64,000 nt of DNA from Mytilus californianus (Eukaryota). The notes under the pieces are model-generated. The model saw only the letters and a list, made by a program, of their open reading frames with translations. It was not told where the DNA came from and did not search any database. The position numbers were made by a program, and so were the translations under genes. This document shows positions 18,524-64,000 of this stretch, in pieces. The stretch lies in NCBI RefSeq assembly GCF_021869535.1, contig NW_026262712.1:38812001-38876000 (forward strand). Reading direction: 5' to 3'. Each line of letters opens with the position of its first letter. Positions within the stretch are counted from its first letter, which is position 1.

Positions 18524-18744
18524 GTAATATCCTTAATATATGCTTTATCATGTATATAGTGTCTAAACTACTGTCAAGTAAACAACAAATCAAATGTTTT
18601 TTTAAAATTAATATGCGTTTGTTCAGAGAAAATATAAAGATCTTTCCACCTTCCATTCCTCAAACATTTCCCGTTCTTTTTTCGTCGATCGTGACATTAT
18701 CTAATACGACGTATAACTGTTTGTGCTCTTGCAATGAGTAACAC

Positions 18745-51890: not shown

Positions 51891-54762
51891 TTATAAAAGT
51901 TATTGCTTCGATATGAGATATTAACAACCCGGATACATACCAATAACATATCTGCATTTTGTCTGTCTTATTTTGAATTCAAAGGTAAAATAACAAAAAT
52001 ACCGAACTCCAAGGTTAATTCAAAACGGAAAGTCCTTTATAAAATGGCAAATTCAAAAGCTCAAACGAATGGAAAAACTGCAGCGCATTTCAATTGATTC
52101 TTATGTATGTGTATCCCGTGAGTGCGATTTCTTTTATATGTACATGTAAGTTCGTACTGAAAAAACACAAGATGTGTTGTGTTTATCGCTTTCATATGTC
52201 ATTTAAACAAATAGCGATATAACCCTTGGAATCAGTGTATCACCAGTACATTCCAGCAAACTTACCGTCTCAGTGGGTGTTATAAAAGTGATATAATATT
52301 TGTGTTTGCAAGTCTTGTGTTCAAGACTGAAGTTATTTATGTATGATCTTGGTGCTATTTAAACAAATAAAGTGGACTTTACTCGGTGAATAACTCATTC
52401 ATATAGTGATATTTAAAGAAATATTAGATGTTGTGACACGTCATTAAATAGATGAATTATTCAAAATGCATTGTTAAAACGTTTGTCCCTGAATTCAATT
52501 TGCTTGGGTATTTCACTTAATTAACATTAGTAATTGATTTCATATTTAAAGAAATGAATGTACGAGAAAGTCACCATTGATTTTAAGGTGGTCTACACAT
52601 TGGTAGAGTTGAAACGTAAAACATGCTTTAAGTAACACACTGATAAAAAAATGTGATAAAACTAGAACATGTATGTATTGTTGTCGATTGTTGAACTATA
52701 TATTGTTATATCGGGCAACAAAATAATATACATGTATGTGTACGCTACGATCTACACCTTTTATATTTTTTCTAGTGACATTTACCGAAGTTTTTTTTTA
52801 ATTTATAGAGTTGTTCCAGTGCATTGATGTAGGAACAAATTTTGCAAATAATTATCAAACCCTTGAATCCATTTTTTAGTGAATATTTTACTTGACTTAT
52901 TTTACGCAACCCGCTAAACAAGGCTCAAACGAAATAAACGAAAAGACATGTACTTTATCTGTTAATAGTATTGCCGAAAAAAAGAAGATTACTTATATGT
53001 ATTATCTACAGTTAAAAGTAATTGATTTATAAGTATATTCTTATCTGTATGTCATAAATAACGAAACATCTATGTATAAATCAACGCGACAACAGTTTAA
53101 TCTGACACCAGTGAAAGTAATTTGAGAAACTCACTCAACAGTGTTAACTGCCTGCATTATTCAACATACATGTAGCATGATTACGTAAAAAAATTAGACA
53201 CATTTTCTATCAGTTGTAAACAAAACTTTATATCAATAAACTTATATTTACGCTTATTTGTCATAAGCCAATTGGGTGCATCCTTTTGCTCCTGATTTAT
53301 ACAACATAATGAAAAACTTTAACAAATACAAAATATGGTCAACACACATGAGATTGATTTCGTGTGATATGAACAGCTATGGTTGATCAGACGTATTGTC
53401 ATATACACAAAGTGATTTTCAATATTTGCATTATAAGAAACTTATATTAACAAACACGTATAAACTAGCATCTTAACACTTGACTCTAACGCTTATAAAT
53501 GAAAACATCATTGCTACATAACATAGTTGTTTCTAATTATATATTCATAAACAGCGTAACTGACACAGTTATACACAAATTATGTGAAATAAAATTCAAA
53601 ATTAGCATTTTGTCTGTATTTTTTCTTTGTATACCATGTATACTCAGCGAGAAAAACATATAAAAAATTCATTATTATTCATGATGAAAATGTTACCTAG
53701 GTTTCGTGAGATTTGAATTTCAGAAAATTACTGATGTCTCTAACTTAAAAAAAAGAAACAGGACCAGATCAAGGCAGAAGTATCTTATCAATGTTCAAAT
53801 CTCACAAAGTCTTGTCAACATTTTCATCTTTGAGATATTTATTACTCTAAAAGGGTTTTGATTGTTATTTAATATCAGGGTAAAATAGTGGTCTAAGCAT
53901 TTTATCTCCTCGATTGTCATATCAGTTTCCTAAATTTGTTTTTAAGTTAAAAGGCTTTACCAAGTCCTTACTATTTCACGGCATGCTCTGTGTGCATGGT
54001 AAAACTAGAAACACAAACTTCCATATGCATTCAATTAGACGGACTGATACAGAAAATAGATATTGTTCGTACCTGGTAAACTATTAAATCAATCTGTAAT
54101 TTATATTTGCAAATATGGTTAAGACATTAATTGGCTGCTTGCTTAACAGAATCGGTGAGTTTTTGAATCATATCAAAATCCTATAACACCAACTGTAATA
54201 AAAAGGACAATATTGAACTCGCAAAATATGTCATCCCTCCATATGGTATTGGCGCTACGCTATCACCACTAATAAAATAATTCTTGAAAAAACCGAACAA
54301 TATATTTTTAAGTAATTTTCAGTCTTTCAGACAATTTTTAGACGAATCCTATGCGATAAATTTAGTACTTTTCAGAAAATTCGTTTGCGGTTAATTAAGA
54401 TATGTTTAGTTTACTATTGACTAGTTATCATTTACCTGTACACATCAGCATCATACTGCACTGTCTGGGAAAGCTTATAAACATAATTGAACTGATTGCA
54501 TCGAATTGTCTGAAATATACTGAATTTGTCACATTTTTCAGACGATACGGATGATGTTAAGATCAAAATAACCGTTCAAAACTAAAATGCATTCTATAGT
54601 GCACACTCACAAGAGCCAACTATATATGGTGCATTGATTTTATCGTTTATCTTTAACATTTTGTTTAAGGGCAATTCAAGGACTTGATTATTTTTTTTTT
54701 ATGATATATTGAATATATTATGTATTTTTTTTTCAATAGATACCGTAATACAGTAAACCACG

Positions 54763-55529
54763 ATGGCTCAGGCAGCGTCAAAAACATGTGAAATTTGTGT
54801 GTGTAGTCCAGGTCATAACTATTGTGAACAGTGTGACCAGTTGTTTTGTGATGGTTGTAAAGTATCACATTTACGATCAAAGATGGCCATGAATCACACA
54901 TTTTTAAGTGGTCCTAACGTCATCCCGGAAGTGAAACGATACTGCAAAGAACATAATGAAAGTTTCATTTACTTCTGCATGGAATGTGATATGCCAATAT
55001 GCAAAATATGTGTGATTAAAAATCATAAATCACATGATTTTGCTGAAATCAAGGAATCGACTGAAGGGATCAAAGCAGAAGTAAAAGAAGTCATCGAAAT
55101 GAAGATTAAAAACCTCCAATCAAATATAGCAGAGATTGAGCAAAGTTTAAATAAGTATCAGGCTGACGTTTGTGAAGTCATTCAGGCTATAAGAAAAGAA
55201 GGAATGCAATTAATCAAACTGATTAGTAAGAAAATCAAAAGTCTTGTCAGGTCAGTGAAAGAGCAAGAAACAAAGACACTTCATACTTTACAGTCTTTAG
55301 ATACTGCGTTTAAAACTGGTTTGGATAAGGCAAAAGAACAGTACAAAATATTTGAAGACACGCAAAGGATAACAGATACCACTAAAATGCTTCAAAAATT
55401 AAAACAAATTAAATCACAAATCGATTTTGTAAAAAAGCCCCGGGTTCCTGTGATGCCATTTGTCAAATATGCTAGCAAGAAAGAAACAAGTAGTGAAATA
55501 GAGAAACTGTTTGGGGACTTAACATTTGG
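54763..55529 (+). CDS. RING-less TRIM-like protein, first coding exon (B-box1, B-box2, coiled coil)
   Basis: CEIC...CEQCDQLFCDGC...H...H and CKEH...FCMECDMPICKIC...H..H, then a heptad-rich region. Acceptor ttttcaatag at 54738-39. The ORF-track stop TAA lies inside the donor GG|GTAAGT (55530), so the gene continues in phase 2. Confidence 0.9.
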
Positions 55530-55827
55530 GTAAGTTTGTTTTAATAATTGAATCTATGTAGTTTCTTGAAGACACTGTTTTTGGTCTTTTTGTTTTTTGT
55601 TTTTGTTTCCTATGTCAAATCGTGTTAGTCCTAGCAGGGAAACTTGATAGTTAGTTTTGATCACCTTTACCTCACAAACTAACATTAGATTTACGTAGAA
55701 ATGGATGGTCTCAGATACGCCATCTTGGAGTGAATCTTTTTTTTTTAATATTACATGCAGTACACAAATGACACGTCAGAATATAGTCTGATAAAACTGC
55801 AGCTTCCTCTATGTCTGACAATTGGCT

Positions 55828-56044: not shown

Positions 56045-56654
56045 AAACTCCTCTGACATTCCATGTCAGGCTTTTATTTGATGTCATAAAACATGGACTG
56101 CCAGGGAAGTTAATAATTGCTACCTGCTGGCCATTCGCCAAATTACAGGTGGTCATCCAGGTGTATAATTTACTGTCACATGTTGACAATTATTCTCTGG
56201 CTTGCGACGAAATTAGCAGAGCGCGAACAGAGAGATGCTTATCTGTCGACGGCAGCGACGATGTCTTAAATATGTTTTGTAATGTTCAAAAAGAAGATAT
56301 GGAAGCTTCAAACTTTCTATATAAATGTCTTCTGTCAGGAACTCTCATATTGCCATTGCCCTAATCTCATTTTCATGATTCAGTGACTGTTTAAAAAACT
56401 GCATGTTTTTGATAAATATGATGTTCACACTTATACATGTTATAAGTAATAGAATAAATATACTAAGTAATTTGTAAAAGTGATCCTTGATAGGACTACA
56501 CGACAGACATGTTTTATCTGATTGCGACCTCATTTCATGAATCAGTGATGAAGGTTAAAGTTTCGTGATTATGTTTATTTCTGAGAAAAAAACTAGACAG
56601 TATGTCAACTAGAGATAAGACCTTGAATAATTATATTGTATACATAAACAAATA

Positions 56655-57230
56655 AGGAGATGTGGTATGATTGCAAATGAGTCAACTATCCACCAATGTT
56701 CAAATGAAGTGGGTATAACAAATTATGTGCGACTCCAACAATGAGAAAAACCCATACCGACACGTAAAATGTGAAAGAATTCAACGATAGACATGAACAA
56801 TAGACAACCACTGCTGAACTACAAGTTCCTGAATTTGGAAAGGCACTTACATAATGTAGCGGGGTTAAACACGTTTGTGAGCGCCAAACCTTCCCCCTAA
56901 CCTGGGACAGTTGTGAAGCAGTAAACAGAAGAACAAAATATAAAAATCAGCTGGCAAGGGCTCCACCCATCTGATCAAAACAAAGCAGGAAATCAACTAA
57001 CAAAATCACAGACCAGACGTGGCAGGCTATTTATACATCCTCTACAACAAACAAGACACAAAGTATAGATCTGAGAATACTCACAGTTGCTGACAGCTTG
57101 TTCAACATGTGTTCAAAGCCAATTACAACTAATAAATAATCATGTTCTACCAGAGTAAAATATCAATCATTATAGGGTCAACGGATTTAGTGTGAAGACG
57201 TTATAAACAGTCTGAGAATTATATGACCTA
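56655..57230 (-). mobile_element. Longer copy of the same family
   Basis: Tail ggagatgtggtatgattgcaaatgag, module gcggggttaaacacgtttg...cccctaacctgggacag, extra 5' sequence to ~57230. Confidence 0.65.
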
Positions 57231-57465
57231 TAGCAATGCCAAAATATAAGAAAACAATATTGACAGGATGTAGGATAATGACTTCGCATAACTGTGCATA
57301 TATAGCGATATAGATTTAGTTATTGTAGAATTTTTGAAAAACACAATCAATGTTAATATACCAAGACATTTAACCATGGCGTTGTCTTTTTTTTCGACTT
57401 AAGATTTTGAATGTTAAAAAAAGAACATTTTGAATGTGCCTTTGGTATCTTTTGCCTCTCTTTTG

Positions 57466-58301
57466 TTGCTGTCTGCATTGTACTTATTAAAAGTTAGTTC
57501 GTTTGGGTAAAATTCAGCAGTAAAATTAGAAAATTGTTGGTTATGTTAAGCCAAAATATCATCAAGGTAACGGTAAGTGTTTATGAATGATCATTTACAC
57601 GTAATATACTGTGGATTCATTATTATTCGTTGGGTACCAATTTTCGTGGATTTCGTAGGTACAGGTAAACCACGAATTTAAATGTTCAACGAATCACAAA
57701 TTTTCTATAAGATTGTATGCAGACTTTGGCAAAACCACGAAATCAAGTATCCACGAAAATGCAAGTTTTCCTCAATCCACGAAAATTGGTACCCACGAGA
57801 ATAAATGAATCCACAGTAGACGGATCTTTACTGAGTTTGGTCAAAACTGTGATACATAACAATACAGGAACATGTCTGCTGTTAAAGGGGCACAATTGGT
57901 GCCCATAGGAATACCTACAACCTGTCAATAAAGGTTATTGTCGAAAGGTACATAGATGTTGTTAAGAAACAAATTAAAAATTTAATCATCTCATCAAAGT
58001 TCCAGTAAGTATATCTAGTATATTTTCTTTTTCCATTGCAAAAGAAGGCTTTAAACGAGTTGTTGCAATTAAATCTGCAACCAGACTTTTCAAAGGACTA
58101 TGTTATTAAGTAAGAACACTTCTGTTGGATTAGATTGTGTGGTAGTGTAGTGTAAAGAGTCGAAAAATCATAACTGTAAACTGAATTGAACGGACCATCA
58201 AACGCATGTAAGTTATCCAAAACATCCAAAGAATGTTTTACACTCCAAAAATAGTTAATTATTTTCACATGCCCTATTACAAAAGTTAATAACAAGTTCA
58301 T
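57466..58301 (-). mobile_element. Decayed Penelope-like RT fragment (lineage-1-related), split by a MITE
   Basis: Minus strand YSYDFSTLYTTLPH ... QVVGIPMGTNCAPLTADMFLYCY, resuming after the MITE as NTYRYLDDILA; several stops and frameshifts. Confidence 0.8.
57609..57816. mobile_element. MITE with ~40 bp TIRs and TA target duplication (Tc1/mariner-type)
   Basis: TA|CTGTGGATTCATT...GGGTACCAATTTTCGTGGATT at left, matching reverse complement ...AATGAATCCACAG|TA at right; removing it rejoins the RT frame. Confidence 0.85.
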
Positions 58302-58815: not shown

Positions 58816-59534
58816 GTAAGTCAAGTGTATATGGTGTATGGAATGGTTTAATTGCATACATGTTTATCTGACAATTGAAAATAACATTGACCTTAATTTC
58901 ATATTTCACTGTGGAGTTTTGTGTCTAAGTCAGGTTTTTTTTTCTCAGATTCTCTAAGCAGAAGGACAACTGCTTTGATGTCTGCTATTATTGTAAGGCA
59001 TGTATGTTTGTCTATAAGAGTTTATCGGATCATGACCATAACGGTTCATCTACCAATGTTAAATTATCATAATCAGGTGCGTTTTACATACGTTTTATGT
59101 GTATGAGCTTTTGATTTTGCAATTTGATATAGAACTTTCTGTTTTGAATTGTCCTTGGTATTTTTGTTATTTTACCTTTTACGGATGCAGTAAGTAATAT
59201 AAGGTAATATATGTTTATTGCATGGGATGATTGTTTTGTTTATATGTCTGTTTGACAGATTTTTTCTGAATTTTTTCATGGTTCATTGATCGAAATCAAG
59301 TTTCGTGGTAATGCCTGTTACTTGGATACTTTAGGAAGTGGGTAGAATGTTTTTAGTTAGAAAGGATTAAGCCTAGTTCATAATGCTTTTTATTTAGGGC
59401 TATCAGAGCAAATGTGGTTTGTTTGTTTTAAGTAATACAGAGTTTTTTTTTCCATTTTACAATACATTATAATTTTGACGCATATGTTTGTAAGATTATT
59501 GAATGAACATTGTTAATAAGGAACTTTTTTTCAG

Positions 59535-59582
59535 AGAAATTATCAAAAGTGAAGAAAACACGAAACATCGGAAGGACGTCAG
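59535..59582 (+). CDS. 48-nt micro-exon copy 1 (EIIKSEENTKHRKDV)
   Basis: tttttttcag | 48 nt | gtttgt; open in phase 2. Confidence 0.6.
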
Positions 59583-60466
59583 GTTTGTATTTATAATGGC
59601 CATCAAAGATGTTAAATGCAGCTGATAAAAAAAGGTTTAATTTCGATGTTAACACCAAATTCATAAACCTTCTACCAAGTATATTAAATACCACTAAAAC
59701 CTGATCAAATGCTAATTTTAAAATTGATTTGGAAAACGTCTTTCTAACTAAGGATAGACAAAACTATTACCAGTATAAACTACACAGCCATTGAAAATCA
59801 AAAACGCACAAAGAACAACACTTAAAACGTAAGCAAAGGCAGCACAAAGCCCTTTTAAACAAATTTAAAGGTGATCTAGCTTGATCTATAACAAGAAGAA
59901 GATCCTGTTCCATTTGTAGCATCCGTCGTGTTTTTCATGTTTGTACAATCAAGTCATTAGTTTAATTCGATAGGTTATATTCATGGAAAAGAGTACCTGT
60001 TTGTGGTTACGACAATAAGAACATATCCGTCGTCATATGTGAAACAGGTATTTCATAACAGTAAACCAACTCTTGATAACGTCCGTAAAATTTTCGAAGG
60101 TTTGATTTCAACTGATAAAGTGCCAATACGGACTGGATTTCATAATAACTACCAAACATCTATCATTAAATTCTTAAGAAGGAAAAGAAACCGCTATGCT
60201 ATATCTAATAGCAACTACTGACGAGGTTTTAGTTATTCAAAGTTACTGTTTTTAATATACAGTTCAATCTTTTAACCTTGATTAGTGACAAAGACAAAAT
60301 AACAATAGCGTTCTTTTAATACAAATTAAAAAAAAAAGAATATTGAGGGTTATCACAGCTAATGTGGTAAGTAATGACACGTTATTTTCATTTTACAATA
60401 CATTTTGATTTTGACGTATACGTTTGTAAGAATGACAACTGTTATTAAAGAACATGTTTTTTTCAG

Positions 60467-60514
60467 AGAAATTGTCGAAAGTGATGGAAACACGAATCAT
60501 CAGAAGGACGTCAG
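60467..60514 (+). CDS. 48-nt micro-exon copy 2 (EIVESDGNTNHQKDV)
   Basis: tttttttcag | 48 nt | gtttgt; open in phase 2. Confidence 0.6.
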
Positions 60515-60903
60515 GTTTGTATTTATAGGAACCATTAAATGCAGATGTTTTCGATTTTTTTATTTTTATGTTAAACTCTTATATGAAGTTACTTTTTCTA
60601 CAATGTTTATGCAATCGAAACCCTCTTTATCTAATTTTTCAGGTTTGGCACAATTTTATGGACTATTTTGTTTTCATTGGTTTTTATCTCTAGAAAAGAT
60701 AAGAACAATACAGTACTTTTAATACATACATTTTGGGAAAAAAAGTTTTTTTTTTTATTTAAGGTTATCAGAGTAAAAACGTGGTATGTTTTTTCTAAGT
60801 AATGCAGAATGTTTTTTTCTTTTTCATTTTACAATACATTAAGATTTCAATGTATACGTTTGTAAGAATGAACATTGCTATTAAGTAATATATTTTTTTT
60901 CAG

Positions 60904-60951
60904 AGAAATTGTCAAAAGTGAAGAAAACACGAAACATCAGAAGGACGTCAG
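60904..60951 (+). CDS. 48-nt micro-exon copy 3 (EIVKSEENTKHQKDV)
   Basis: tttttttcag | 48 nt | gtttgt; open in phase 2. Confidence 0.6.
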
Positions 60952-62064
60952 GTTTGTATCTATAGTAGCCATTAAATGCAGATGTTTACGATATATTTAT
61001 TTCTATGTCAAACTTTTCTGTGAACTTACTTTTCATATGCTAATGCCAATCGAAACACACTGTTATCATTCTATTATTTTCTAAGATTTAACACAACTTT
61101 GTGGGATGTTTAGGTTTCACTGGTTCTTTTTTCTCCGTACTCAGTTGTTTAATCAGTGAATACATTTCAACCTAACTTTTGTAATTTTGTTACGATTATA
61201 TCAAGTGATGAGGAATGACACATTAGCGCATTGGTACCTGACTCTTATCTAACCCAAAGACACCACCAAATTCTACCAAGTATATTCAATACCACTAAAC
61301 CTGATCAAATGTCAATTTTAAAATTGATTTGGAAAACGTCTTTCATAACTAAGGATAGACAAAACTATTACCGGTATCAACTGCACAGCCATTGAAAATA
61401 TAAAACGCTCAAAGAACACCATTTCACACGTAAGCAAAAGCAGCACGAAGCCCTTTTGAACAAAACTACGGGTGGTCTATAACGTTAAGCAGATCCTGTT
61501 CCATTTGTGGCATCCGTCGTGTTTTTCATGTTTGTTCAATCTAGTCATCAGTTTAATTCGATAGGTTATATTCATGGAAAAGAGTACCTGTTTGTGGTCA
61601 CGACAATAAGAACATATCCGTCGTCATATGTGAAACAGGTACTTCATAACAGTAAACCAACTCTTGATAACGTCTGTAAAATTTTCGAAGGTTTGATTTC
61701 AACTGATAAAGTGTCAATACGGACTGGATTTCATAATAACTACCAAACATCTATCATTAAATTCTTAAGAAGGAAAAGAAACCGCTATGCTATATCTAAT
61801 AGCAACTACTGACGAGGTTTTAGTTATTCCAAGTTACTGTTTTTAATATACAGTTCAATCTTTTAACCTTGATTAGTGACAAAGATAAAAGATCAATAGC
61901 GTACTTGTAATACAAATTAAAAAAAATATTGAGGGTTATCACAGCAAATGTGGTATGTTTATTTGAAGTAATGAAGTGTATTCATTTTACAATACATTGA
62001 TTTTTGCGCATACGTTTGCAAGATTACCGATTGATTATGTATTGACAAGGGGCATATTTTTCAG

Positions 62065-62112
62065 AGAAACTGTCAAAAGTGAAGAAAACCCAGAACATCA
62101 GAAGAACGTTAG
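62065..62112 (+). CDS. 48-nt micro-exon copy 4 (ETVKSEENPEHQKNV)
   Basis: tttttcag | 48 nt | gtttgt; open in phase 2. Confidence 0.6.
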
Positions 62113-62495
62113 GTTTGTATTTATATTAGCCATTAAATGCAGATGTTTACGATATGTTTATTTCTATGTCAAACTCTTCTGTGAACTAACGTTCTGTACA
62201 ATGTTAGTGGCAATCGAAATCCACTTTATTTTATTTTTCAGGTTTGACACAACTTTGCGAAATGTTTTCATTGGTCTTTTTCTTTGTAAAGATACAGAAC
62301 AATATAGTACTTTTAATTCATAAATTTGAAAACAAATGCGTTTTTTTTTAAATCTATTTAGGGTTATTAGAGCAAAAGTGGTATGTTTAGCTTAAGTAAT
62401 GCAGAATGTTTTTTTTTCAGTGTACAATACATTATGATTTTGATGTATACGTTTTTAAGAATGACAATTGTTATTAAGGAACATTTTTTTTTCAG

Positions 62496-62543
62496 AGAAG
62501 TTTTCAAAAGTGAAGGAATTACGAATCAGCAGAAGGACGTCAG
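62496..62543 (+). CDS. 48-nt micro-exon copy 5 (EVFKSEGITNQQKDV)
   Basis: tttttttttcag | 48 nt | gtttgt; open in phase 2. Confidence 0.6.
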
Positions 62544-62889
62544 GTTTGTAGTTATAGGAACCATTAAATGCAGGTGTTTTCGATTTTTTTGTTTTCATGT
62601 TAAACTCTTATGTGAAGTTCCTTTTCCTACAATATTTGTGGCCATCGAAACCCTCTTTATCTAATTTTGCAGGTTTGGCACAATTGTATGGACTATTTTG
62701 TTTTCATTGGTCTTTATCTCTAGAAAAGATAAGAACAATACAGTTTAAGGTTTTCAGAGTAAACGTGGTATGTTTATATAAGGTAATGCAGATTTTTTAT
62801 TTTTTTTTTTCATTTTACAATACATTAGGATTTCGATGTATACGTTTGTAAGAATGAACATTGCTATTAAGTAACATATTTGTTTTCAG

Positions 62890-62937
62890 AGAAATTGTCA
62901 AAAGTGAAGAAAACACGAAACATCAGAAGGACGTCAG
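62890..62937 (+). CDS. 48-nt micro-exon copy 6 (EIVKSEENTKHQKDV)
   Basis: tgttttcag | 48 nt | gtttgt; exon sequence identical to copy 3. Confidence 0.6.
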
Positions 62938-64000
62938 GTTTGTATTCATAGTAGCCATTAAATGCAGATGTTTACGATATATTTATTTCTATGTCAAACT
63001 CTTCTGTGAACTTACTTTTTCTATATTAATGCCAATTGAAACACACTGTTATCCTTCTCTTTTCTTTTCTTCAAGATTCAACGCAAATTTGTGGGATGTT
63101 TAGTGTCCATTGGTCCGTTTTCTCCGTATTCATTTGTTTGACCAGTGAATATATTTCAATCAAATTTTTGTAATTGTGTTACGCTTATAAGATACGTTGA
63201 TGACCTATATCCAGTGATTAGGAATCACACAATAGCGCATTGGCAACTGACTAATATCTAACCAAAGACACCACCAAATTCATTAACTTTTTACCAAGTA
63301 TATTCAATTACCCCGAAACCTGTCAAAATGTCAAATTTTGAAAATGAATTTGAACACGCTTTTCATGATTAAAGATAGACAAGAATATTACATGTATAAA
63401 CAAAACAGTCATTGAAAAACTAAAAGGCACAAAGAACAACACTTAAAACGAAAGCAAGAGCAACACGAATCCCTTTTAAACAAAACTAGAGGTAATCTCA
63501 CATGCTCCAGAACGGTAAGCAGATCCTGCTTCACATGTGTCATCCATCGTGTTCTTCGTGTGAGTACAATACAGTGAATAATATAATTCGGAAGTTAATA
63601 TTCATGGAAAGGAGTACTTGATTGTGGATACGACAATTGGAACATATCCGTCGTCATCTGTGAAACAGGTATTCAATAACAATCAACAAACTCTAGATAG
63701 CTTCCGTAACATTTTCGAAGGTTTGATTTTAACTGATAAAGTGTAAATACGGACTGAATTTCAAAATAACTACCGAATATCTATCATCAATTCCTTAAGA
63801 AGGAAAATAAACCACTATGATATATCTAATAATAACTACTGACGCGGTTCTCGTTATTTCAAGTTGCTGTTTTTAACATACAGTCCATTTTTTTTAACCT
63901 TGATAACCTTAATATAAATTAAGAAAACAAATGTGGGTTATCGCAGCAAATGTGGTTTGTTTATATAAAGGGATGAAGGATCATTTTCATTTTACAATAC

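What the first reader, a model, noticed from the sequence alone, without database searches (positions are those of the whole stretch)
59535..62937. Tandem array of 48-nt frame-preserving micro-exons downstream of a TRIM-like B-box/coiled-coil exon
Seen: six copies, each exactly 48 nt, each bounded by polypyrimidine-cag and gtttgt. All are stop-free in phase 2, the phase of the upstream TRIM-like donor (GG|GTAAGT at 55530), while the surrounding monomer DNA has many indels. Phase 0 is closed by TGA in every copy. The peptides vary (EIIKSEENTKHRKDV, EIVESDGNTNHQKDV, EIVKSEENTKHQKDV, ETVKSEENPEHQKNV, EVFKSEGITNQQKDV), and a seventh monomer starts at the window edge. Inference: an exon-duplication cassette that could tune the length or sequence of the linker between coiled coil and C-terminal domain by cumulative, skipped or mutually exclusive splicing, and that may vary in copy number between individuals. 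Caveats: substitutions are mostly non-synonymous, so constraint is shown only by length and splice sites; phase 1 is also open; young duplicates may simply not have decayed yet.
Basis: partly seen in the sequence, partly recalled or inferred. Interest (0 to 1): 0.8.

Follow-up and report, generated by a model that had tools for sequence, protein, structure and literature searches.

The report
Eightfold repeat of one tiny exon
In a mussel gene for a small zinc-finger/coiled-coil protein, the DNA segment carrying one 48-letter coding exon has been copied eight times in a row with every copy still fit for splicing, but the one RNA data set I could read showed the gene silent, so whether the copies are used is still open.

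Summary
There are eight 48-nt units, six in the window and two just beyond its end. All are bounded by a polypyrimidine tract plus cag and by gtttgt, and all are open in phase 2.

The unit is coding exon 2 of a Mytilus-specific family of short, RING-less B-box/coiled-coil proteins. The genome matches the Mytilus californianus assembly. Its five closest paralogues each carry one such exon with the same splice signals, and RefSeq proteins include it as 16 residues.

There is no large C-terminal domain. The gene ends with a second 48-nt exon (YRYRCxxC) 6.4 kb past the array and an 18-nt exon (TEIFSE).

Exon plus donor is the only indel-free block of the roughly 400-nt monomer. Neutral simulations make intact AG, GT and frame in all eight copies unlikely (P about 0.02 down to 0.002). 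Synonymous versus non-synonymous changes look neutral.

RNA gave no test. In about 6% of one RNA-seq run, exon 1 and copies 1-3 had essentially no reads. No annotated protein carries this exon 1.

I found no feature that would enforce mutually exclusive choice. Additive or cassette inclusion is the default prediction, with one precedent: a related mRNA with two units. This is a new instance of tandem exon duplication, of moderate interest.

The parts
54763..55529 (+). Coding exon 1 (256 codons): two B-boxes plus a coiled coil. ATG at 54763, acceptor ag at 54740-54741 just upstream, donor GG|GTAAGT in phase 2.
   Evidence: ORF. Pfam zf-B_box 3.2e-13; TRIM_CC 25.1 bits, below the 30-bit cut-off. 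60-82% identical to Mytilus family proteins. All Cys/His ligands kept, and 73 of 80 conserved columns. Donor read.
59535..59582 (+). Exon-2 copy 1 (48 nt, phase 2-2): EIIKSEENTKHRKDV
60467..60514 (+). Exon-2 copy 2: EIVESDGNTNHQKDV
60904..60951 (+). Exon-2 copy 3: EIVKSEENTKHQKDV (identical to copy 6)
62065..62112 (+). Exon-2 copy 4: ETVKSEENPEHQKNV
62496..62543 (+). Exon-2 copy 5: EVFKSEGITNQQKDV (most diverged; donor gtttgtag)
62890..62937 (+). Exon-2 copy 6: EIVKSEENTKHQKDV
59390..64000 (+). Tandem array of about 400-nt monomers. It runs on to about 64650 in window-equivalent coordinates, with copies 7 (64073-64120) and 8 (64474-64521) beyond the window. Copies 2-3-4 and 5-6-7 form a duplicated block of about 2 kb.
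59653..60282 (+). Dispersed repeat of about 630 nt (thousands of copies in the genome) inside monomer 1. Homologous insertions lie at about 61129-61873 and 63118-63904.
   Evidence: No tRNA, Rfam match or terminal inverted repeat.
62362..62380 (+). One of eight conserved blocks of 19-21 nt, most bounded by ag and gt, about 120 nt upstream of each 48-nt unit. The others are at 59398, 60348, about 60768, 61934, 62749, 63936 and ext 64350. If spliced in, a block would shift the frame to phase 0, where every unit has a TGA.
   Evidence: (family D7). Homologous to intron-1 sequence of paralogues par1 and par3.

Best explanation
The array is an eightfold tandem amplification, by unequal crossing-over, of a segment of about 400 nt. 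That segment carries coding exon 2 of a RING-less B-box/coiled-coil gene belonging to a Mytilus-specific family. The normal family gene has exon 1 (256 aa), one 48-nt exon 2 (16 charged residues), one 48-nt exon 3 (YRYRCxxC) and an 18-nt exon 4. Here exon 2 is present eight times. Every copy keeps the family's acceptor, its cag|..AG|gtttgt donor, its 48-nt length and the phase-2 frame.

Shown: the anatomy, the homology, the completeness of the gene, and an excess of conservation on exon length and splice sites.

Inferred: when the gene is transcribed, the copies behave as independent cassette exons and are included additively, some perhaps skipped. That would lengthen the charged spacer between the coiled coil and the C-terminal CxxC knuckle from 16 to as many as 128 residues in 16-residue steps.

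Not shown: any transcript of this locus.
For: Eight in-register copies with intact signals. The five closest paralogues of the same genome each hold one homologous 48-nt exon with the same splice signals, followed by exon 3 and exon 4. RefSeq proteins P0003, P0012 and P0013 map at 100% to these paralogues. P0003 and P0012 contain the 16-residue unit once, and P0013 is an isoform that skips it. The gene itself is complete: exon 3 at ext 70907-70954 and exon 4 at ext 72592-72609, and exon 1 keeps all its zinc ligands. Exon plus donor is the only indel-free block. Identity is 88% in the exon and 94% in the donor, against 71-77% in the flanks. Under neutral evolution on the flank tree, the chance that all eight copies keep AG, GT and an open frame is 0.023 with substitutions alone and 0.002 with indels at a third of the flank rate. 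Precedent for additive use: the mRNA contig L012/P0052 of a related mussel gene has two units in tandem, 48 + 45 nt. Nothing would enforce exclusivity. The introns are 346-1135 nt, the units are multiples of three, all use the same GT-AG type, and no docking/selector pairing rises above shuffled controls.
Against: No RNA support. In run X3 (about 6% of the run read), depth was 0 on exon 1 at 55250-55448 and 0 on the bins of copies 1-3. The 16 reads near 55518 all carry a different base, so they probably come from a paralogue or another allele. No joints at 55529 were listed. No protein with this exon 1 exists in the large protein collection, although proteins of the same assembly's paralogues do, so the gene is probably not annotated as coding. 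Synonymous to non-synonymous events are 4:16, which is the neutral expectation. Copies 2, 4, 5 and 7 diverge as fast in the exon as in their flanks. The donor gtttgt is weak, and several paralogue models read through it. The simulation assumes that flank rates apply to the exon, and indels are naturally commoner in T-rich intron sequence.
Confidence: 0.55

Rival explanations
1. Silent by-product. The locus is a solitary, unexpressed or dying family member on another chromosome. The array is just an intronic tandem repeat made by unequal crossing-over, and the copies look intact because they are young or lucky.
For: No RNA reads on exon 1 or on copies 1-3. No annotated or assembled protein carries this exon 1. 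The synonymous to non-synonymous ratio is neutral. Half of the copies diverge at the flank rate. The nearest M. coruscus relative (P0002) has a premature stop in exon 1.
Against: Exon 1, exon 3 and exon 4 are all intact with their splice sites. Flanks differ by 5-24% with many indels, yet no copy has an indel, a lost AG/GT or a stop. One sample read at 6% depth cannot show silence.
Confidence: 0.3
2. One copy only. A single copy (the first, or copy 8, which is closest to the family consensus) is the working exon 2. The others are skipped pseudo-exons within the intron.
For: Copy 8 (EIVKSEENPKHQKNV) matches the family consensus ETVKKEENPKPQKNV best. All paralogues work with one copy.
Against: All eight copies have splice signals equal to those of the validated paralogue exons. 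No feature marks one copy as different, and unused copies would be expected to decay.
Confidence: 0.1
3. Mutually exclusive choice of one of eight variants, as in Dscam-type exon clusters.
For: The copies differ in sequence (five to six peptide variants), which could in principle provide alternative linkers.
Against: No candidate docking site in intron 1 or in the post-array intron pairs with the monomers above shuffled controls. The conserved intronic blocks are also present in single-copy paralogues. The introns are far too long for steric exclusion. Units of 48 nt keep the frame, so nonsense-mediated decay cannot police double inclusion. All sites are of the same GT-AG type.
Confidence: 0.05

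Closest known systems
Mytilus short B-box/coiled-coil proteins annotated as 'TRIM9/TRIM71/TIF1-like' (e.g. P0003, P0008, P0012 and P0026; 288-311 aa)
   Same: Same exon 1 (60-82% identity), same phase-2 donor, same 48-nt exon 2 and flanking intron blocks, same 48-nt exon 3 with YRYRCxxC, and same 18-nt exon 4.
   Different: They carry exon 2 once; this locus carries it eight times. It also lies alone on contig C132, not in the C165 cluster.
Tandem exon duplication as a source of repeated or alternative exons (reviewed in PMC9013439 and PMC9741552). Classic additive examples recalled from general knowledge, not tested here: the 54-bp exons of fibrillar collagens and the repeat exons of nebulin and titin.
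   Same: Short, symmetric, frame-preserving exon copied in tandem together with its splice sites.
   Different: Those cases are documented in mRNA; here use is unproven. Most described animal cases are pairs used mutually exclusively, whereas this is an eight-copy array with no exclusivity mechanism.
Schistosoma micro-exon genes (MEGs; bioRxiv 10.1101/2023.06.21.545858, PMC4350168)
   Same: Runs of short symmetric exons separated by much longer introns, thought to yield protein variants by exon skipping.
   Different: MEG exons are mostly not copies of one another, and they encode secreted proteins. There is no homology, and here only one exon is repeated inside an intracellular-type B-box protein.
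Dscam-type mutually exclusive exon clusters with docking and selector sites (PMC1431710, PMC6071210)
   Same: An array of tandem duplicates of one exon lying between constitutive exons.
   Different: No docking/selector complementarity was found, and nothing prevents multiple inclusion.

Membership tests
TRIM (tripartite motif, RBCC) proteins | N-terminal RING finger | tested here: not met
   Pfam scan of exon 1 finds only B-box models. The protein starts directly with B-box 1 at residue 9.
TRIM (tripartite motif, RBCC) proteins | One or two B-box zinc fingers | tested here: met
   zf-B_box 3.2e-13 with two stretches, and ANCHR-like_BBOX 4.8e-8. All Cys/His are kept.
TRIM (tripartite motif, RBCC) proteins | Coiled coil after the B-boxes | tested here: inconclusive
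   TRIM_CC covers residues 115-249 at 25.1 bits, below the curated 30-bit cut-off.
   Downstream coding sequence is only the 48-nt exon 3 and the 18-nt exon 4. Family proteins end 20-55 residues after exon 1.
Mytilus short B-box/coiled-coil family (exon 1 + 48-nt exon 2 + 48-nt exon 3 + 18-nt exon 4) | Exon 1 of about 256 codons ending ..LFG-L-F with a phase-2 donor | tested here: met
Mytilus short B-box/coiled-coil family (exon 1 + 48-nt exon 2 + 48-nt exon 3 + 18-nt exon 4) | 48-nt phase 2-2 exon encoding E-x-V-K-x-E-E-N-..-K-N-V with donor AG|gtttgt | tested here: met
   Eight copies here, and single copies in five paralogues, aligned and mapped.
Mytilus short B-box/coiled-coil family (exon 1 + 48-nt exon 2 + 48-nt exon 3 + 18-nt exon 4) | 48-nt exon 3 encoding ..TTTA-Q-YRYRCxxC, and an 18-nt exon 4 encoding TEIxSE | tested here: met
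   Exon 3 at ext 70907-70954 and exon 4 at ext 72592-72609.
Tandemly duplicated cassette exons used in mRNA | Tandem copies, length a multiple of three, same phase, intact AG and GT | tested here: met
Tandemly duplicated cassette exons used in mRNA | Junction reads joining the copies to flanking exons or to each other | tested here: inconclusive
   No reads on exon 1 or on copies 1-3 in about 6% of RNA run X3. The gene is not detectably expressed there, so there was no test.
Mutually exclusive exon clusters | A mechanism enforcing one-of-N choice: competing RNA pairings, steric exclusion, frame or NMD policing, or U2/U12 incompatibility | tested here: not met
   No pairing excess over shuffles. 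Introns are 346-1135 nt, units are 48 nt, and donors and acceptors are uniform.

The most novel reading that the evidence does not exclude
The array is a working, copy-number-variable 'ruler'. Individuals and tissues would produce B-box/coiled-coil proteins whose charged spacer varies in 16-residue steps, and in sequence, through combinatorial inclusion of eight cassette exons. That would give an expanded, possibly immune-related mussel gene family a splicing-based layer of diversity on top of its known gene-level diversity.
Probability: 0.15. Interest if true: 0.6.

Novelty: new member of a known kind. Interest (0 to 1): 0.3.

Why it matters
If the copies are spliced, this would be a clean natural case of a protein spacer lengthened stepwise by very recent exon amplification. 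The single-copy paralogues in the same genome would serve as built-in controls. It would also add to the ways in which the large bivalve B-box/TRIM-like families diversify. If the copies are not spliced, it is an ordinary intronic tandem repeat in a silent gene copy. In either case the report corrects the gene model: there is no large C-terminal domain. It also defines a Mytilus-specific family built from one large exon plus micro-exons of 48, 48 and 18 nt, which automatic annotation handles unevenly, with many read-through models.

Tried and rejected
1. RNA test. The RNA run showed only repeat-derived reads in intron 1, so nothing can be said about splicing. X1 and X2 turned out to be DNA contigs.

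2. Dscam-like docking/selector search in intron 1 and in the post-array intron, with 12-, 16- and 18-nt windows and G-U pairs allowed. Counts equalled those of shuffled sequence (one search timed out).

3. The idea that the conserved 19-nt ag..gt block in each monomer is a deleted relic of exon 3. Local alignment scores against own and paralogue exon 3 were at shuffle level, z between -1 and 1.4. The block also aligns with intron-1 sequence of paralogues par1 and par3. Rejected.

4. Search for more proteins with repeated units, using the tail of P0052. It found only itself.

5. Exact look-up of the exon-1 product found nothing on record. P0001's contig is too short to reach exon 2.

A shorter pattern worked.

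7. tRNA, Rfam and inverted-repeat scans of the array and its inserted repeat found nothing.

8. The literature search for this mussel family found nothing relevant.

9. Exons were handled one by one, by reference.

Full report
**Observation**

Each has a T-rich tract plus cag upstream and gtttgt downstream. The peptides are as listed. Phase 2 is open in every unit, and phase 0 is closed by TGA in every unit. The exon-1 donor is GG|GTAAGT, with the exon ending at 55529, so the next exon must supply one base. The units do so.

The window is G000:C132:38812001-38876000. I fetched the next 19 kb and found two further units at window-equivalent 64073 and 64474, making eight copies in total. The monomer is about 400 nt. 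Three monomers carry a dispersed repeat of about 630 nt that has thousands of copies in the genome. This stretches their spacing to 930-1180 nt and probably explains why Tandem Repeats Finder reported nothing here. Copies 2-3-4 and 5-6-7 form a duplicated three-monomer block of about 2 kb. The two edge copies have the most diverged flanks, as expected for an array shaped by unequal crossing-over.

**What the unit is**

Exon 1 (54763-55529) encodes two B-boxes and a coiled coil, with no RING. A word-based protein search returned 88 relatives, all named ones from Mytilus and nearly all 256-350 aa long. Their sequences show the family plan:

- exon 1 ending ..LFGELTF;
- one 16-residue unit, (G)ETVKKEENPKPQKNV(R);
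- a second 16-residue unit, VTTTAKQYRYRCxxC;
- often a short end, TEIISE.

The genome is the Mytilus californianus assembly or an identical one. Contig C165 has exactly the contig length recorded for that species' RefSeq proteins, and P0003, P0012 and P0013 map to it at 100% identity. The five closest paralogues lie on C165 at 92.67-93.52 Mb. Each has one 48-nt exon 2 with the same cag|..AG|gtttgt signals, one 48-nt exon 3 and an 18-nt exon 4. The array is unique to the C132 locus at the sensitivity used.

P0013 is an annotated isoform that skips exon 2, so exon 2 can behave as a cassette. Several models read through its weak donor.

**The rest of this gene**

Exon 3 lies 6.4 kb beyond the array at ext 70907-70954. 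It is also 48 nt in phase 2-2 and encodes ETTTATQYRYRCANC. Exon 4 lies at ext 72592-72609 and encodes TEIFSE, with either a GA|GTAAGT donor or a read-through TAA. Exon 1 keeps every Cys/His ligand and 73 of 80 strongly conserved columns. The gene is thus complete on paper.

With one unit the product would be 294 aa, like P0003 and P0008. There is no large C-terminal domain. In longer relatives the tail is a small CxxC..CxxC knuckle or, in P0046 and P0048, a region hit by Pfam PF18112.

**Is there constraint?**

In an alignment of the eight monomers, the block running from the acceptor through the exon to about 20 nt past the donor is the only stretch free of indels. Mean pairwise identity is 88% in the exon and 94% in donor positions +1 to +12, against 71-77% in the flanks.

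The picture is mixed in detail:

- Copies 1, 3, 6 and 8 have exons far more alike than their flanks (Fisher P of 0.001-0.006 for several pairs).
- Copies 2, 4, 5 and 7 diverge at the flank rate.
- Of 20 inferred substitution events, 4 are synonymous, which is just the neutral share.

I simulated neutral evolution on a conservatively estimated flank tree. All eight copies kept AG, GT and an open phase-2 frame in 2.3% of runs with substitutions alone, in 0.2% with indels at a third of the flank rate, and in none of 20,000 runs at the full flank indel rate. An earlier run on a cruder tree gave 0.1%. Two caveats apply: T-rich intron sequence gains indels more easily than the exon does, and gene conversion is ignored.

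**RNA**

The run search found no RNA holder of exon 1. It did offer one RNA-seq run (X3) from the same study as two DNA holders. I laid X3, X1, X2 and X4 on window:55250-61200.

About 6% of X3 was read. Depth was 0 on exon 1 at 55250-55448 and 0 on the bins holding copies 1, 2 and 3. Sixteen reads lay near the 3' end of exon 1, and all of them carried A instead of C at 55518. They therefore probably come from a paralogue or another allele. No joint at 55529 was listed. The only RNA depth lay on repeat fragments in intron 1.

The gene is therefore not detectably expressed in that sample. This is no test of splicing and only weak evidence for silence. Consistent with that, no protein in the large collection carries this exon 1, although the same assembly's paralogues are there.

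**How it most likely works**

None of the known devices for one-of-N exon choice is present:

- The introns between copies are 346-1135 nt, too long for steric exclusion.
- The units keep the frame, so double inclusion cannot be policed by nonsense-mediated decay.
- All sites are of one GT-AG type.
- A search for a docking site that could pair with a conserved selector in at least six copies gave the same counts as shuffled sequence.
- The conserved intronic blocks are shared with the single-copy paralogues, so they are family features and not array-specific selectors.

Each copy's signals equal those of the paralogue exons that annotation shows in use. The default expectation is therefore independent cassette behaviour, that is additive inclusion with some skipping.

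One precedent exists. The spliced mRNA contig L012 (protein P0052) comes from a more distant family member in another mussel data set, and it carries two units in tandem, 48 + 45 nt.

I put about 55% on the copies being spliced exons of a working gene, 30% on a silent or decaying locus, 10% on only one copy being used, and 5% on exclusive choice.

**Comparison and novelty**

Tandem exon duplication is a well-described route to repeated or alternative exons (PMC9013439, PMC9741552). Micro-exon runs are known from schistosome MEGs (bioRxiv 10.1101/2023.06.21.545858). Exclusive clusters are known from Dscam (PMC1431710, PMC6071210). I found no paper on this mussel family.

This is a new instance of a known kind. 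It is notable for the number of copies, the small size of the exon, and the single-copy paralogues available as controls in the same genome.

**Dead ends**

The idea that the conserved 19-nt ag..gt block in each monomer is a relic of exon 3 failed. Scans for tRNA, Rfam families and inverted repeats found nothing. The tail search with P0052 found only itself.

Noticed in passing
window 59398-59416, 60348-60366, ~60768-60788, 61934-61952, 62362-62380, 62749-62767, 63936-63954; L009 1350-1368: Each monomer holds a second conserved block (GGTTATCAGAGCAAATGTG), mostly bounded by ag and gtatgt/gtaagt, about 120 nt upstream of the 48-nt unit. At 19 nt it would shift the frame into phase 0, where every unit has a TGA, so it could act as a poison micro-exon. 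It is homologous to intron-1 sequence of two paralogues and is not a relic of exon 3.
   Followed up: partly
window 59653-60282, 61129-61873, 63118-63904: A dispersed repeat of about 560-630 nt, with thousands of copies on both strands across the genome at 71-77% identity, sits inside three monomers and was duplicated along with them. No tRNA head, Rfam match or terminal inverted repeats; class unknown. Identity between the copies is mosaic (96% in one part, 80% in another), which suggests gene conversion.
   Followed up: partly
L009 9592-9613 (window-equivalent 72592-72613); paralogues on G000:C165: The family's exon 4 is an 18-nt micro-exon. Its donor GA|GTAAGT overlaps a read-through stop (GAG TAA). 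Using or ignoring the donor therefore gives either ..TEIISE-stop or a longer tail, as in P0012.
   Followed up: partly
window 56600-57850 and 59030-59230 (intron 1): Strong RNA and very high DNA word depth on repeat fragments in intron 1, with reads that run on into unlike sequence. These are expressed dispersed repeats, not this gene.
   Followed up: no
L011 10001-10741 (M. coruscus contig CACVKT020006407.1): The closest named relative of exon 1 (P0002, 77% identity) has a premature TAG ten codons before the usual exon end. Only one exon-2-like unit (at 18528) lies within the 10 kb fetched downstream.
   Followed up: partly
They might belong to an extended tail like that of P0012 (..EEAPSIEAPSM). 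Not examined.
   Followed up: no
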